From: Pelomyxa schiedti
Lineage: Eukaryota; Protista; Evosea
DNA length: 64,000 nt
Direction: 5' to 3'
Assembly (NCBI GenBank): GCA_020536535.1
Contig: JAHLWZ010000590.1
Location: forward strand, 1 to 64,000
A program made the position numbers and the translations under genes. The notes beneath the pieces are model-generated. The model saw only the letters and a list, made by a program, of their open reading frames with translations, searched no databases and had not been told where the DNA came from. Each line of letters starts with the position of its first letter. Position 1 is the first letter of the stretch. Shown here one piece after another: positions 1,186 through 13,327 of the stretch.

Positions 1186-3649
1186 ATTTAACTTGTCTTG
1201 AGGACTCGCTCGAGTATCTTAAAAGCACACACACGGCCAGTGGGAAGAACCCAGCAGCTGCTGCCTTCGGTAGAACTCCTCTGAGTCTGGCAACGGACAA
1301 GCATTCACAGGAAGAGTTTTTCTTCTCCAAGATGGGCTGTGCACCCCTACCCCCACTACGGTAGTTCTTACATTTGTTTTGGTTGGTAGGTTGAGATATT
1401 CTGTGCGGTGTTAGGGCAGTGAGAATGAGTTAACTAGCTTACCGGCGGAGGACGAGGAAGCCAACGTGAGGAGTGCGGTCTTGTGGAATAGTGCACAAGG
1501 TCTTTTGACCCGGCCGGGTCTTTGATTTATGGAGAGTAGTAGAAGAAGTGTCTCGAAGAGCAAGTTGTTGCAAACTACTGGAGAGATATTTAAGAGTGGA
1601 AGGAAATGATGGTAAGGGAACGCACATTGGGCAAGAATTTTGATGTAATTAGGAGGAGCTTGAAGCTGCATCTCTTGCAAAAGTTCTAGGAGAGCACTCC
1701 CCTGTCATATGGCTTGGAATGTGCAGTTGCTTAGTATAAAGGGGTGCCACCTTTTCATAAGTACGGGGGCAGTGTTTGAACTGTCGAAGTCGTTCGTTGT
1801 ACACCCGAGTTGAATCTTGTGTTGTAAGACATTGGTGAATGTAGACCGAAATTAGCTTGGTTGAGTGCTCGACAGCTGGGGGAAAAAAATGGGCCAAAGC
1901 AACTGACTGAAGACTGAAGGGAATAGACCACAGATGCTTCTTGGTCTATTTTGTCGAATAGTTTTATTCAGCAGCACTATTGCTTTGAAAATCCTGGGAC
2001 AGTGTCAGGAGTGACATAGTAGGAAGCTAAACAAATACACATTAGTTTCTTGCACTTCTCAACCTGCCGTTTATTGTCATTGGGTTCGACTCACACAGCA
2101 GAGAATCCTCCGATAAAGGTCTATTTGATTCCTACTTGTTTTTCCGGGGAAAATTTTACCGTTTCATAATACTTGGCATAAAAAGGGGCGTATCCTGCAA
2201 ACATATATACTTGTATCTTAGCGCTTAAAAACCAAGAGTTTTTCTGTACCTTAAACAGAATAACTCCAAAAATCCACATTTTTCAGTGTAAGATTTTCGG
2301 TTCGGGTTAAAAGGGGTTACAGTATTTCAAGAGATACCTAAATTCAACAATTAGAACAGGAAAATGGGGGAGGGTCTAGGATTACCTTCGGAGCCAGAAA
2401 ATAGGAGACCCACAGCATATCAGACGAGACTCTGTGGACCCTCCAAAGGATTTTGGATTTGCACGCTTTAAGGAAGTTAGAAAATCAAAAACCTACACCA
2501 CATAATCATACCGCCGCAACTTTCAATACCAACACTTTATCTTCCAAATTGAGCAATAGATTGTGGGGCTTGGTTATAACAGTAAAAGTAATGAGGAGCC
2601 AGAACAACCTTCAGATCAAAATAAGAAGGAAAAGTAATGGCAGAGGTAATTTGTGCAGAATGTTTTTATTGTGAAGTTCGAGGACACCCCATGCTATATC
2701 GGTATGGTTTATTGATAAAGACCTTGGAAATTCGACTGTTGCACCAAGTTGTTCCATGAAGAATTTAGCCTCGTTCTCACACTCTTTCTTTATGTGGGTG
2801 TCCATATCATCATTGTTGCAGTACTCAAAATTACACATATTGCTCAGTTCACCTGAGTGCAACACTTTCTATCTTGTTCTTAAGACAAGACCTTTGATGG
2901 TTACGGGCACGCCTTGTACCTGAAGTAAACCATAAAACCACAGCGTTGGTTGGACAAGTGGGATTCGTACACTCGTCATTTATCGTGAAAAAACCATCTC
3001 CTCCTTCGTGCATTGCATGGCAAATGTGGTGCCAGGGACTACTGTGCTCACACACAAAAATAAGTTTCTCCAAAGGTATGATGACGACGTGGGGTAACTG
3101 CCTGGCACCCAGACAGTCCCTCCCGTGCCTAACGCATAATCAAATACAAGTTTCGAATCACAAATCTAAAACACACACTGACGCCCTTTCTGTCATGTCT
3201 ACCACAACAACACCCACAACAGAGAGCAGCGCCGAAAACTCGACGACACAAACAGCGGGTGCGAGGAGCCGCTTGTTTTCGCCTCACTCTCAATTCTCCT
3301 ACTAGTGCCAGCACCGGCTGAAGCAAAGGCGGAGAAATTGGAGCGTCTTTGCAAGCACGCCAAAACTCGTGGGGTGGACGATGCATACAAAGTAACTTAC
3401 TTCCCCGTTCTATCCCCAAGTTTTAGGGTTAATTTTTTTTTTTTTTGCCCAGGATAAAGTGCGTGGTGCTACGTTTGTGTGTGGAAAGTGCGGAAGGTGC
3501 ACAAACAATCCAAAGTTTGTCTGTGTGCCAAAGAAGCTGTGACTGCTGCCGACGGATTGATGTATTGAGTTGATTGGGAGTGATGTTGTTTGTGATTGGT
3601 GATGAGTTGATTTGGAGTGGGATACCATTTGGTCCCCAATATTCTTTGC

Positions 3650-6600
3650 TTTTTGAGGGTGGTTAAAACTTGGTGAAGTCTTGAAGTGTCCTGTGCCGGT
3701 GCAAATAAACCCATAGCTTTTGGTCTGGATCAAAGCGAACACACGGGTCTCGTTCCGCATGCAGCCGATCCAATGCACCACTGACAATTGTGTTGATCTG
3801 AGTTTTCTGGATATTCTCTACCACGAACCTGAAGAAAAGGTAAGGGTGGGTTTCGCTGGAAAAAGCTGGGAGAAATACTGAGAGTCACTAAGTAGCATTG
3901 CAACGTCAGGGCGGGTTCCAACTCCCCCAGGGAGTCTAGCAGCCGCATCGCGTACTAAAGGAAGTATGTTGACAAAAGAGGGTCTATTAGACTTGAGCAT
4001 GAAGTGTTCTCGAGGCTTAAGAGAGGGATTTCCTGCACGATTCACTTGTTTGATTAGGTTTTCCGAAATGTGGTTGTTTTTTGGCATGTGAGATTACAAA
4101 AAAAAAAAAAAGTGTATGCACTCACCTGCCACTCTTTTCAAAGGTGCAACGACACTTTTGACCAATGGTAAGTTATACTGAAAAGCTTGCTCTGGAATTC
4201 GGTATCTCTCGGCTTCTTGGCGTCGGAACTCTTGAACAACATCTCCTGGAGTTGCCTCAATTGTCGGGCCACTTTTGCTCATGCGGGAAGATGAAATTTT
4301 GAGTTCCCTGAACTCACATTAAAATAACCAATGGCAGAGTCTTTTTGTACGATTTGTCTTCATTGAACATGTTTCTTGACAAAGCAAACCAGAACAGCTG
4401 TTCTAAAGACTGCAATTGTTCTTCTTTTTCCTTAGTCATCTGCGGTTGATATCGTCTCGTATCATTAAATGGAAAACGAGAATCGGGTGTTGCTAAACAA
4501 GCTTGAGAGGCCACAAACTGGAGAAAAGTAAAACCTTTTTCCAACCACTGCCAGTACCCAGTGTCCGAGTCATACCGCACGGCGGGCTGGAAGTGGCTCC
4601 CAGGAGTGATGGTGATGGATGGTGGATGTGCCAAAAATCCAAGTGCATATCGCAGAAAGAGACCTACATGGAGACTTGGCGGTATGTCACGTAGGATGAT
4701 ATCGTGTTTTTCAATACGTTGAGTGAGAGCTAAACAGAACTCAGAAACATTAAAAACGAGGCAAGGTACTCTCAAGTGTAACACTGAGACCCTGGGAAAA
4801 AAAGAGTGCTCGGAGTGTAGTAAATAGTACAAAAGCGGGTATATACTGTTGGTGTTATAATTTTGAAGAAAGCAAGTAATTACTTACATCTTAAAGGCAA
4901 CCAAAGGAAAAAGGAATGTATGGTTAATGAGATAAACTCTAATAAGACAGAAGTACCTCTCTTTCTGATATACCTTGAAAAGTGGTGTAAGTCATGTTTA
5001 TATTACCCCATAAGAATCTTACCCCGATAAATGTTGGTGATGTCTTTTGTGTTTTTTGTGGAACTCTTCCTCTATCTCACCGTCCTCGCCACCACTACTG
5101 GAACCAGTGTCCTCATTGTGTGTAGTGGGAAGCAGTGCCGTGTCCGTGAGGTTGTTTGGAATTCCCAATGATGAACGATAAAGAAGAATTTTGCCTGTTC
5201 TTTATGAGATTTTTTCCAGAAGGAAACGAAACGTTACTGATTAAATTAGCATTGTATTCTTTCATGGAGTGAATGTAACATTTGAACTTCAGTAGTCTAT
5301 ACTGCTTGCGGTATCTTTGGACCTCTGGTGCCAAGAAACCATCTATTATACAGTGAGCAGGGTGAAATTTTAATTCGTCTCGACTTCTTAAGTCACGTGT
5401 GAACTGGTGAACTGGGTTATTGAAGTGAAAAACTTCCCCAGCAAAAAGATTCTCCAATATCGTTGTCTGTGAAGTACTAACTTTTGGCAGGAGTTCCTGT
5501 TACAAAACCTTTACATAAAAAAAGAACAGTTGAACAAAATACTTGCAGAGAAGCACGTTGCTCTTCAGAAAGAATCGAGTTCCAGGTGTGCATGTTGAGA
5601 ACAGAGCTTAGATCTGCTAGTTTACAAAGGGCAAGAGGCAAAACTACAGTAATACCACATGCCTCAACTTCCTCCCATTTAGGAGCAGCATCTTTACTGA
5701 TTGCCTAGAGGTACTCAATGACTATGTAGTGCACCTGAGACCAATAGATACCTGTACAGGGAGTTCATCATCAGACAAGTCCTTGAGGTACCGGGAACGC
5801 AATGTCGCCGCTCTGTCAATGGTGAGTGCAAGAATAGCAAGAGAGTATGCATTACAACCTTCTGCAACGTTGTTCTGCTCTTTCTTCGTCTGCAGCTTCT
5901 TGTTGCTGTTTTCGTAATTGCTTAGCTTCTTCTTCTGCTAGGTGATGCTGCCTCAAAAGAAGTTGTTGCTGTTGCTGTTCTGCATTGACTTGTGGTGGGG
6001 GTGGAAGGGGTTGTGCTGCTTGTTGTGTATGAGATGCACCATGCCGACGCTTAGGAGCAGGTGCACAAGCATTTGAAGGTGTTGGGGGCTGTTGAATTTG
6101 TGGCGATGACTGTGTGATGGGTGATGGTTGAGCATACGAAGTCTGAATGGGTGAGTTAGGTCCGGAATGGCGTGATCTGTTTGCTGCAGACTGCGAGGAA
6201 ACTGGAGGGGGTGAATATGCTGGCGGGGGTGACGACAACTGAGTGGGTGAAGAGTAAACCTGCTGTGACTGCTGCATCACGGGGTACTGTTGGAATGCAC
6301 GTGTGTCGACGCTGGTATGCTGTGGCTGTTGCTGCTGTTGCTGGGATTGTAGCTGTAGTTGCAGAGGCGGAAGCTGCTGCACCGGTTGCCCATAGCCCGT
6401 CTGTTGCTGTTGCTGTTGAGGTTGTTGCTGCTGTGGTTGCTGTTGCCTCCTCTTTTTCTTCTTTTCCGTTGGAACGACCCCAGCGTACTGCTGCTGGTAC
6501 GCCGTAGCCGACGAGCACAAAGAAGCGGAATTAACAACCACAACGTTCCCGTGTGTGCTCTGCTGCCTCCCTCCGCCGCTGACGCCGCCGCTAATATCCG

Positions 6601-11563: not shown

Positions 11564-11969
11564 ACAGGTCTAAAATAAACAGAAATACATGTCCACTTTT
11601 TTTTTTTCCTTAAGTTAACCTTTACATAGTTTTCTGCCAGCCCATTGGGAAAATGTGACAAGTTACCCCGGTTGCTTGTGGGTGTAGAGATAACAGTCGA
11701 CTGATTGTTGTGCCGAGTGCATTTTCCACTTCCGTCGCCCCAGTTGTCGCTCCAAGTTGGTGTTGATACTGTTCGCATAATTCCCAATCCAATTTTCGCA
11801 AAAATTTTGGTTTTGCGCCAACCTTTTTAAGGACCAAAAAGGTGCGATTATTAAAAAAAATAAAAAAAGAAACCGGATGCGGAAGAAGTACCAGCTACAC
11901 CAGAAGGTGCGACACAGAAACTCAGAAACTCAGAATCACACGTGGCAAACAGGGTGCATCTGGATCAGC

Positions 11970-12075
11970 AAGGAGCATTTGGAGCAGTGCTTGGGAGTGC
12001 ATTTGAGAGCGGGTGGTGTGCATTTTTGGGAGCATTTGGAGCGGAGCGGAGCGGCGCATTTGGGAGCTGGGGGAG
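11970..12075. repeat. Imperfect short tandem repeats of a GCATTT(G/T)GGAGC-like unit
   Basis: Several visible copies of gcatttggagc, gcatttgagagc and gcatttgggagc. Confidence 0.5.
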
Positions 12076-12432
12076 TTTGGGTGGGTCTGGCAGCATCAGT
12101 CATTTTGGGGATAGCCAGCAGCAAAGCAAGCAAGCAGCATTTTGGGGGCATATAGAGTACAACAGAGGCTATTGTTACATTTGCAGCAAAAACACCCAAT
12201 ACAGGCGGGGGGTAGTTCCCTTCATCCCGTTGCGGCTGTAGTTGCTGGGGCAAAAAAACGGTTTTTGGTTCCTTTAAAATCAAAAACCAAGTAGGAACCC
12301 CGTTGCTGCCGAAGTTCGGCTCCCACAATTCATAAAGAGGAAAACGGTTGGAGGAAAAAGCCTGAAAGTAGAGATTTCCCTTCTGAGGGAAGCTCCCATG
12401 GTTCGCAAAACAACCAAACAGGGCTCCTAGTT

Positions 12433-12544
12433 CTAGACAGCCAATCTGGAGGTCAGGGTTCGATTCCCTGCCTGGGGAGAGATTGACGGTGGAAACTTCA
12501 ATGTCACACAACAGCAACCCCAGGTGGTGTAATGGTAGCACTCT
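12433..12544 (+). tRNA. trnG-GCC: Circularly permuted tRNA gene, Gly(GCC)-type; 3' half at 12433-12478 precedes 5' half at 12518-12544
   Basis: 5' half CCCCAGG-TG-GTGT-AATGGTA-GCAC-T (A box). 3' half CTAGA-CAGCCAA-TCTGG-AGGT-CAGGG-TTCGATT-CCCTG-CCTGGGG-A (B box). Acceptor 7/7, D 4/4, anticodon 5/5 and T 5/5 stems pair (G-U allowed); A15-U48 and U26-A44 are consistent; total 71 nt. Confidence 0.85.
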
Positions 12545-12594
12545 TCTAGGAGCACTTGGCTGCGCTTTCCCCCAACCTTCCCTCCTGCACGTCA

Positions 12595-12604
12595 TTTTTT
12601 TTTT
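12595..12604 (+). terminator. RNA polymerase III terminator (T10) downstream of the permuted tRNA
   Basis: First run of 4 or more T after the 5' half, about 50 nt downstream. Confidence 0.65.
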
Positions 12605-13327
12605 CCTCTCCAGAGAACCGGTTCTTAGAAATCAGCAACGCAACGCAATGCAATAACAACGAAACGAAAGAGCACAATAACTGCTACATCAACTAGTACA
12701 GCCAACACTAGCAGAACGCGAAGGACGGGAGTGGGTGGTTGCTTCACTGAAGCAACTCTTCGACCATCATTGGAGGGCACAAGCCACGCACCTAGGGCGA
12801 GTGCTTGATGATGGGTTCTCAGATCAAGAGTCAATAATTATTGGACAAAACAACCTAGAAGATCTAAAGAAAAGAAACCACAGTAAGCCGCGAATCCAAA
12901 AACATATAGACGCACGGCAATAAGGGGATTTCATTTATGGTGTAGCTTGAAGATAAATGCAAACCTTTACTGCCACCGAATGACTTGCCACGTTCCTTTT
13001 TTTTGTTAATGACCACGTTGCGTTTGATTTTGAGGTTCCTTGACAACTTGTAGCGCGCAACTTGTTGTTGTTGTGTAACTCTTGTGCGCGTTTCACAGTG
13101 GATTTCTTTTGATTTGTCGAGTTCCAATAAATCCTTGTTCGTTCTCAGAACCTCGTTGTGGAAAAAGAACAGAAAGGCCCGAGGAAGGTTCAAGGAACTT
13201 TCAGAAATACGCGTCATCTGTACTCCAAGGCCTTTTTAAGTGTCCTCGGCGTTTTGCACAACTTGTTGAAAAAACACTTCTGTCTAGGAACGCAACAAAA
13301 ATAAAAGCAAACAGAACATTCTATTCC

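What the first reader, a model, noticed from the sequence alone, without database searches (positions are those of the whole stretch)
12423..12553. Leader/trailer complementarity forming a relaxed BHB-like splice junction at about position 28/29
Seen: the leader GCTCCTAG (12423-12430) is the exact reverse complement of the trailer CTAGGAGC (12546-12553). Both halves share TCT at the junction, so the break lies between 25/26 and 28/29. Inference: one fold gives a central helix CACT/AGTT (3 of 4 pairs), a 3-nt bulge CT|A on the leader strand, a CT|TCT loop on the trailer strand and a 6-bp AGGAGC/GCTCCT helix. Cutting after the second unpaired base on each strand, as tRNA splicing endonucleases do, yields exactly the canonical T26-C27-T28-A29 product. 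The break is in the anticodon stem, not at the usual 37/38 site.
Basis: inference. Interest (0 to 1): 0.75.

Follow-up and report, generated by a model that had tools for sequence, protein, structure and literature searches.

The report
Permuted tRNA-Gly junction without BHB
A glycine tRNA gene is written back half first, and a short RNA helix holds its two outer ends together; the proposed splicing signal at the join is no better than chance, so how or whether the halves are joined remains open.

Summary
GCTCCTAG (12423-12430) is the exact reverse complement of CTAGGAGC (12546-12553). It flanks a circularly permuted tRNA-Gly(GCC) gene: positions 26/27-73 at 12432-12478, a 39-nt spacer, then positions 1-28 at 12518-12544, with TCT present in both parts.

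The helix is the most stable feature of the predicted precursor (pair probability 0.96-0.99). It extends to 12 bp past a bulged A, and it is unlikely to be chance (p about 0.01-0.05).

The BHB reading fails:
- Strict BHB geometry fails for all four possible junctions.

The 3' part encodes the whole anticodon arm. The accessible cut sites are therefore the unpaired linkers at the hinge between the D stem and the anticodon stem (25/26 or 26/27), not 28/29.

Best reading: a closing stem clamps a permuted pre-tRNA, and removal and ligation do not use a BHB.

Limits:
- I could show only that the genome is eukaryotic.
- The scan has already noted about eight other permuted tRNA loci elsewhere in this genome, which it attributes to Pelomyxa schiedti.

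The parts
12419..12430 (+). Leader strand of the closing stem. 12423-12430 is the perfect 8-bp part; 12419-12422 is a 4-bp extension.
   Evidence: pair probability is 0.96-0.99 for the 8 bp and 0.71-0.83 for the extension.
12431..12432 (+). UU linker between the closing stem and the anticodon stem. U12432 is the leader-side copy of U26. The two bases can pair weakly with A44 and G45, which would stack the two helices.
   Evidence: pair probability 0.18-0.28.
12433..12449 (+). Complete anticodon arm (27-43): stem CTAGA/TCTGG and loop CAGCCAA. The anticodon is GCC, and position 33 is A instead of U.
   Evidence: (ARAGORN cloverleaf).
12450..12478 (+). 4-nt variable loop, T arm (12454-12470, with a B-box-like GGTTCGATTCC at 12457-12467), acceptor 3' strand 12471-12477 and discriminator A at 12478. 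CCA is not encoded.
12479..12517 (+). 39-nt intervening sequence that closes the acceptor stem. It folds into a hairpin (about 12479-12505) and contains no run of 4 or more T.
12518..12544 (+). 5' part of the tRNA: acceptor 5' strand 12518-12524, U8 and G9, D arm 12527-12541 (A-box-like TGGTGTAATGG at 12525-12535), then U26, C27 and U28 at 12542-12544, the copy shared with the leader side.
   Evidence: D stem probability about 0.9, acceptor 0.97-0.99.
12545..12558 (+). U linker at 12545, then the trailer strand of the closing stem: 12546-12553 perfect, A12554 bulged, 12555-12558 the extension.
12595..12604 (+). T10 run, a likely RNA polymerase III terminator. It is the first T run of 4 or more after T5 at 12262-12266.

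Best explanation
The stretch is the junction of a circularly permuted tRNA-Gly(GCC) gene in a eukaryotic nuclear genome. One transcript, ending at the T10 run, would read: leader, tRNA 26/27-73, 39-nt spacer, tRNA 1-26/28, trailer. Leader 12419-12430 and trailer 12546-12558 pair into a closing stem of 8 perfect bp plus 4 bp beyond a bulged A. This stem sits on the hinge between the D stem and the anticodon stem and can stack on the anticodon stem, which the 3' part encodes in full. Shown here: the pairing, its dominance in the predicted ensemble, its compatibility with a complete cloverleaf, and the absence of a bulge-helix-bulge. Inferred: the stem clamps the two outer ends so that the body folds like a tRNA, which RNase P, tRNase Z and the CCA-adding enzyme need in order to open the spacer-closed acceptor stem. 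It would also bring the two ends to be joined next to each other. The stem would then be cut off in the unpaired linkers (UU at 12431-12432; UCUU at 12542-12545) and the ends ligated. That puts the real junction at 25/26 or 26/27, at the position-26 hinge, not inside the anticodon stem at 28/29. The nuclease is unknown. It would have to be a splicing endonuclease that works without a BHB, or another enzyme.
For: The permuted tRNA is real. The acceptor strands are 7/7 complementary, the T loop and D loop match consensus, and ARAGORN calls Gly(GCC) on the joined halves. The spacer has no terminator and a T10 run lies downstream. The closing stem has probability 0.96-0.99 plus an extension at 0.7-0.8, and cloverleaf plus stem lies within 0.7 kcal/mol of the MFE. 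The helix is improbable by chance (p 0.008-0.056). The 3' part carries all of 27-43, so cuts at 27/28 or 28/29 would fall inside a paired stem, whereas cuts at 25/26 or 26/27 fall in linkers. BHB tests fail or are at chance level. Published permuted tRNAs use leader and trailer pairing next to the junction (PMC3978253).
Against: No second copy could be fetched, so the stem has no covariation support. A33 replaces the near-universal U33, and C1-G72 is unusual, which is compatible with a non-decoding or decaying gene. No TATA-like element lies within 50 bp upstream; the nearest are at 12331 and 12273. Standard eukaryotic endonuclease is reported to need a canonical BHB, or a BHL at 37/38 together with the mature domain (PMC6379350), so no known enzyme fits the proposed cuts. 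The helix p-value is only about 0.01-0.05.
Confidence: 0.5

Rival explanations
1. The precursor refolds so that the leader bases AGUU pair with the D-stem bases CACU. A relaxed BHB-like motif forms, and a tRNA splicing endonuclease with algal-like loose specificity cuts after the second unpaired base on each strand, giving a 28/29 junction.
For: The arithmetic gives the right product. Motifs lacking the central helix ('no H') or otherwise relaxed are accepted in the literature for C. merolae, O. lucimarinus and T. pendens (PMC3978253). No other cut-and-join pathway for tRNA exons is known in eukaryotes.
Against: The fold is 8.2 kcal/mol worse than the MFE and breaks the D stem, and its central helix has probability 0.000. 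One bulge has 5 nt instead of 3, the central helix has 3 of 4 pairs, and there is no exon-side helix. 99% of flank shuffles give a motif at least as good. The same quality of motif is available for every junction from 25/26 to 28/29.
Confidence: 0.1
2. A two-piece tRNA or tRNA-like RNA. RNase P and tRNase Z remove the spacer and CCA is added, but the halves are never ligated. The closing stem permanently replaces the covalent link at the position-26 hinge and projects like an extra arm.
For: The stem and the 7-bp acceptor helix would hold two pieces together. Permuted rRNA and tmRNA genes are known to work as two-piece molecules (PMC3978253). A bacterial YrlA with a 7-bp acceptor stem is cut by RNase P and receives CCA without being re-joined (bioRxiv 10.1101/312249). 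Unchecked scan notes on other loci report CCA-tailed 3' parts with the leader still attached and no re-joined RNA.
Against: No natural two-piece cytoplasmic tRNA is known. An extra helix at position 26 may clash with the ribosome or the synthetase. CCA addition before splicing is also the normal order in yeast (my own knowledge), so the reported intermediates do not discriminate. Nothing was tested here.
Confidence: 0.15
3. An inactive relic. A rearranged or decaying tRNA-Gly gene makes no working tRNA, and the 8-bp complementarity is fortuitous.
For: A33 instead of U33. A helix p-value of only 0.01-0.05. No BHB. No nearby TATA-like element. The trailer's match to the anticodon loop and the AGCACT repeat are at chance level.
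Against: All four stems and the T and D loop consensus are intact. The acceptor strands are 7/7 complementary across a 39-nt spacer. A clean T10 run lies downstream and no terminator lies inside. Leader and trailer show no similarity to the supposedly lost halves, so this is not a fresh rearrangement. The scan notes several similar loci in the genome, which I did not check.
Confidence: 0.15
4. A tRNA-mimic regulatory RNA of the YrlA / Y-RNA type rather than a tRNA precursor. It would have a closed acceptor stem, a T arm before the D arm, and its ends paired into a protein-binding stem.
For: The order of elements is the same as in YrlA (10.1101/312249). A33 would not matter for a mimic. A scan note reads another locus of this genome this way.
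Against: A complete anticodon hairpin with a Gly anticodon is kept in addition to the closing stem, whereas YrlA has none. The acceptor stem has 7 bp with discriminator A, like a real tRNA. Rfam gives no Y_RNA or YrlA hit up to E=10. The Pfam scans of 21 window ORFs returned no Ro60/TROVE family.
Confidence: 0.07

Closest known systems
Circularly permuted tRNA genes of Cyanidioschyzon merolae (Soma 2007, 2013; review PMC3978253)
   Same: The 3' part lies upstream of the 5' part on one strand. A short intervening sequence (7-74 nt there, 39 nt here) closes the acceptor stem. CCA is not encoded and a T-stretch lies downstream. Leader and trailer pair beside the junction, and junctions can lie outside 37/38.
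   Different: The published junctions are 20/21, 37/38, 50/51 and 59/60, each with a BHB-type motif and a TATA-like box within 50 bp. Here the junction is at 25/26-28/29, there is no BHB, the nearest TATA-like element is about 100 bp upstream, position 33 is A, and the host shows no sign here of being an alga (its identity was not verified).
Type II permuted tRNA genes of prasinophytes and the Bigelowiella nucleomorph (Maruyama 2010, cited in PMC3978253)
   Same: Permuted order, and a circular intermediate as the presumed route.
   Different: [quoted passage not shown] That is not the case here.
Trans-spliced split tRNAs of Nanoarchaeum equitans and Caldivirga (PMC4033280)
   Same: Complementary leader and trailer sequences anneal into a helix that brings two tRNA pieces together. 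From memory (not verified here), archaeal split or intron sites include 25/26 and 29/30.
   Different: Those are separate transcription units in archaea, with a relaxed BHB at the boundary between helix and exon, and with an endonuclease of broad specificity.
Bacterial YrlA tRNA-mimic Y RNAs (bioRxiv 10.1101/312249)
   Same: The T arm, a loop-closed acceptor stem and the D arm come in that order. The RNA's ends pair into a stem that leaves the tRNA core at the anticodon side. Some are cut by RNase P and receive CCA.
   Different: YrlA has no anticodon hairpin and is bacterial and linked to Rsr (the bacterial Ro60 homologue). This element keeps a full anticodon arm and a 7-bp acceptor stem.

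Membership tests
Circularly permuted tRNA gene | The 3' part is encoded upstream of the 5' part on the same strand, separated by a short intervening sequence at the acceptor ends. | tested here: met
   12432-12478, a 39-nt spacer, then 12518-12544, with acceptor strands 7/7 complementary.
Circularly permuted tRNA gene | The joined halves give a canonical cloverleaf with the eukaryotic consensus elements (U8, G18G19, U33, T54T55C56). | tested here: inconclusive
   ARAGORN calls tRNA-Gly(GCC) of 71 nt. U8, GG and TTCGATT are present, but position 33 is A, not U, and pair 1-72 is C-G.
Circularly permuted tRNA gene | A single transcription unit: no terminator in the intervening sequence, a T-stretch downstream and a TATA-like box within about 50 bp upstream. 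| tested here: inconclusive
   no T4 run in the spacer and T10 at 12595-12604, but the nearest TATA-like strings are at 12331 and 12273, about 100 and 160 bp upstream.
Circularly permuted tRNA gene | A BHB or BHL motif at the junction of leader and trailer. | tested here: not met
Circularly permuted tRNA gene | A circular intermediate and a mature, aminoacylated tRNA. | not testable with these tools
Bulge-helix-bulge (hBHBh', hBH, HBh') splicing motif | A central helix of exactly 4 bp between the two cleavage sites. | tested here: not met
   at most 3 of 4 pairs in any register. The real sequence does worse than 51% of shuffles, which reach 4 of 4.
Bulge-helix-bulge (hBHBh', hBH, HBh') splicing motif | 3-nt bulges with the cut after the second base, in two-fold symmetric register with flanking helices of more than 2 bp. 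| tested here: not met
in strict geometry the outer helix is out of register for all four junctions.
Bulge-helix-bulge (hBHBh', hBH, HBh') splicing motif | The motif-forming fold is energetically accessible in the precursor. | tested here: not met
   +8.2 kcal/mol relative to the MFE, and central-helix pair probability 0.000.
YrlA / Y RNA tRNA mimic | The paired ends replace the anticodon arm, so there is no anticodon hairpin. | tested here: not met
   a full 5-bp stem and 7-nt loop with anticodon GCC at 12433-12449.
YrlA / Y RNA tRNA mimic | A match to the curated RNA family models. | tested here: not met
   no Y_RNA or YrlA hit up to E=10 in 12300-12700.

The most novel reading that the evidence does not exclude
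A eukaryote that shows no algal features here either matures permuted tRNAs by a pathway that does not use a bulge-helix-bulge, cutting a plain closing stem at the position-26 hinge, or uses them as two-piece tRNAs held together by that stem. Either case would be a new route from gene to tRNA.
Probability: 0.2. Interest if true: 0.85.

Novelty: new variant of a known kind. Interest (0 to 1): 0.55.

Why it matters
In the papers read here, every published permuted tRNA gene comes from a few algae and one archaeon. All of them are explained by the splicing endonuclease acting on a BHB-type motif at 15/16, 20/21, 37/38, 50/51 or 59/60 (PMC3978253; a 2026 review, PMC13578239, still lists only algae among eukaryotes). 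A permuted gene with a junction at the hinge between the D stem and the anticodon stem, and with no BHB, would mean one of two things. Either the endonuclease of this lineage recognises something else, or another cut-and-join (or no-join) route exists. Both can be tested directly with tRNA-seq and end mapping. For this finding specifically, the value of the work is negative: the BHB-like fold should not be carried forward as the mechanism or used to fix the junction at 28/29.

Tried and rejected
- **Fetching the other permuted copies of this genome for covariation.**
  - The look-up of encoding contigs on a window ORF found nothing.
  - Two protein searches returned no hit to the window's own proteins, so the genome is not in that collection and walking along the contig was impossible.
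  - The first metagenome pattern scan found nothing.
  - The second gave 62 loci, none related to this gene.
- **Identifying the organism.** The protein hits are uninformative: actin-like at 40% identity and Sel1 at 27-31%. Only 'eukaryote' can be stated (homeodomain, YEATS, F-box, actin). 'Pelomyxa schiedti' comes from scan notes only. The P. schiedti genome paper does not mention tRNA.
- **Tandem-duplication relics.** Leader against the 5' part and trailer against the 3' part are not significant (p 0.09-0.7).
- **Trailer TTGGCTG pairing with the anticodon loop.** This is at chance level (p about 0.12), has pair probability 0.001, and would form a pseudoknot with the closing stem.
- **Minus-strand ORF 11936-12595 (219 aa) across the gene.** It has no Pfam family and a low-complexity translation, and I judged it spurious.
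- **Other permuted tRNAs in the window.** None were found.
- **Assembly gap as an artefact source.** The only N run is at 700-799.
- **Archaeal split sites at 25/26 and 29/30.** The tri-split tRNA paper is not held, so this stays as memory.

Full report
**What is there.** 12423-12430 reads GCTCCTAG and 12546-12553 reads CTAGGAGC, exact reverse complements.

Between them lies a tRNA written in permuted order:
- anticodon arm at 12433-12449 (stem CTAGA/TCTGG, loop CAGCCAA);
- a 4-nt variable loop;
- T arm at 12454-12470;
- acceptor 3' strand at 12471-12477 and discriminator A at 12478;
- a 39-nt spacer;
- acceptor 5' strand at 12518-12524;
- D arm at 12527-12541, then U26, C27 and U28 at 12542-12544.

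The native order gives no hit in ARAGORN or Rfam, even at E=10. Joining 12518-12544 to 12435-12480 gives a 71-nt tRNA-Gly(GCC) in ARAGORN. My own scans for a T arm followed by a complementary acceptor strand find this locus and no other in the 64 kb.

The spacer has no T run of 4 or more. A T10 run at 12595-12604 is the first such run after T5 at 12262-12266, so one polymerase III-type transcript is plausible. The nearest TATA-like strings are about 100 and 160 bp upstream, not within 50 bp as in C. merolae (PMC3978253).

Two features are atypical for a decoding tRNA: A33 in place of U33, and a C1-G72 pair.

**Is the helix more than chance?** A perfect Watson-Crick match of 8 or more between the flanks arises in 0.8%, 1.9% and 5.6% of dinucleotide shuffles, for 15-, 30- and 50-nt flanks. 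It arises in 13 of 1676 equally spaced genomic 30-nt pairs. This is suggestive rather than overwhelming, and I could fetch no second copy to look for covariation.

In the predicted ensemble of 12400-12604 the eight pairs have probability 0.96-0.99. Four more pairs (12419-12422 with 12555-12558, past a bulged A12554) have 0.71-0.83. The acceptor stem (0.97-0.99), the D stem (about 0.9) and the inner four pairs of the T stem (0.85-0.92) form alongside it. A full cloverleaf plus the helix is only 0.7 kcal/mol above the MFE. In that fold U12431 and U12432 can pair with G45 and A44, so the closing stem stacks directly on the anticodon stem.

**The BHB claim.** I took the definition from PMC3978253: 3-nt bulges, a 4-bp central helix and flanking helices of more than 2 bp. 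The relaxed forms are hBH, HBh' and 'no H'.

- In the two-fold symmetric register, all four cut pairs that yield the right product fail. The central helix has 0-3 of 4 pairs, and the outer helix is out of register.
It has a 5-nt loop and no exon-side helix, it gives up 2 bp of the 8-bp helix, and it breaks the D stem.
- When that fold is forced, the best energy is -49.6 kcal/mol against -57.8 for the MFE. Its central helix has ensemble probability 0.000.
- Fifteen configurations of the same quality exist, spread over junctions 25/26 to 28/29.
- With the 8-bp helix kept and the adjoining bases shuffled, 1987 of 2000 shuffles give a motif at least as good. 1012 of 2000 give a better one with 4 of 4 pairs.

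The BHB-like fold therefore carries no information and cannot place the cut at 28/29. According to PMC6379350, eukaryotic endonuclease needs either a canonical BHB or a BHL at 37/38 together with the mature domain. Neither applies here. 'No H' junctions are accepted in the literature for some organisms, so an unusual endonuclease cannot be excluded.

**Where is the junction?** Sequence alone leaves 25/26 to 28/29 open, because TCT is present on both sides. The 3' part encodes the whole anticodon arm. In the favoured fold the only unpaired bases next to the closing stem are UU at 12431-12432 and UCUU at 12542-12545. Cuts giving 25/26 or 26/27 fall in these linkers. Cuts giving 27/28 or 28/29 would fall inside the paired anticodon stem on the leader side. 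I therefore favour the position-26 hinge. This is an inference, not a measurement.

None of these positions is among the published permuted junctions: 15/16, 20/21, 37/38, 50/51 and 59/60.

**Mechanism.** The best reading is that the closing stem clamps the outer ends so that the body folds as a tRNA. The spacer-closed acceptor stem is opened by RNase P, tRNase Z and the CCA-adding enzyme. The stem is removed in the linkers and the ends are ligated by an enzyme that does not rely on a BHB.

Rivals:
- a two-piece tRNA that is never ligated. Two-piece permuted tmRNA and rRNA offer a precedent, as does a YrlA that is cut by RNase P and receives CCA;
- an inactive relic with a fortuitous helix;
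- a YrlA-like mimic, which the retained anticodon hairpin and the lack of Rfam hits argue against.

**Context and limits.** The window is eukaryotic and intron-rich in appearance. It encodes homeodomain, YEATS, F-box, Sel1 and actin-family pieces, and its G+C content is 47%.

I could not identify the organism, because its proteins are not in the searchable collection. Scan notes name Pelomyxa schiedti and list about eight other permuted tRNA loci. These include two more Gly(GCC) copies, Asp, Gln, Ser, Met-i and Asn. The notes also report no canonical BHB and some read evidence for processing. I used these notes as leads only.

No paper in the library links permuted tRNAs with Pelomyxa. The P. 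schiedti genome paper does not mention tRNA. A 2026 review still lists only algae among eukaryotes.

Noticed in passing
L006:1150-1440 (+), L032 near 1721 (+), L051 near 4926-4987 (-): AT-rich metagenome contigs carry tandem permuted tRNA-like modules: T arm, acceptor 3' strand, a 17-21-nt spacer, the complementary acceptor 5' strand, then a D arm. A repeated flank element lies between the units. The modules sit beside ordinary tRNA genes, and in L006 beside an ORF (1547-3268) that matches phage family phrog_850 'RNA-binding protein' and Pfam DUF7788. This looks like phage Y-RNA-like tRNA mimics next to a possible Ro-like protein. There was no Rfam hit to the modules themselves.
   Followed up: partly
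window 12556-12562 vs 12438-12444: Trailer TTGGCTG is the exact reverse complement of the anticodon loop CAGCCAA. The pairing would form a pseudoknot with the closing stem. By shuffling it is at chance level (p about 0.12), and its pair probability is 0.001.
   Followed up: yes
window 12439 (A33); 12518 and 12477 (C1-G72): The tRNA has A at position 33, where U is nearly universal, and a C1-G72 first pair. Scan notes report a G33 in another permuted tRNA of this genome. This may point to a non-decoding role or to decay.
   Followed up: no
window 12537-12542 and 12551-12556: A direct repeat AGCACT occurs in the D-stem 3' strand plus U26, and again in the trailer inside the closing stem. It is not significant by shuffling.
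   Followed up: yes
window 12260-12299: Two interleaved inverted repeats lie about 130-160 bp upstream of the gene: GGTTTTTG with CAAAAACC, and GGTTCCT with AGGAACC. They surround a TTTAAA string and a T5 run. They could be a terminator of an upstream unit or a promoter element. Seen by eye only.
   Followed up: no
window 11936-12595 (-): A 219-aa ATG ORF on the opposite strand spans the whole tRNA locus. It has no Pfam family and a low-complexity translation, and it is probably not a gene.
   Followed up: yes
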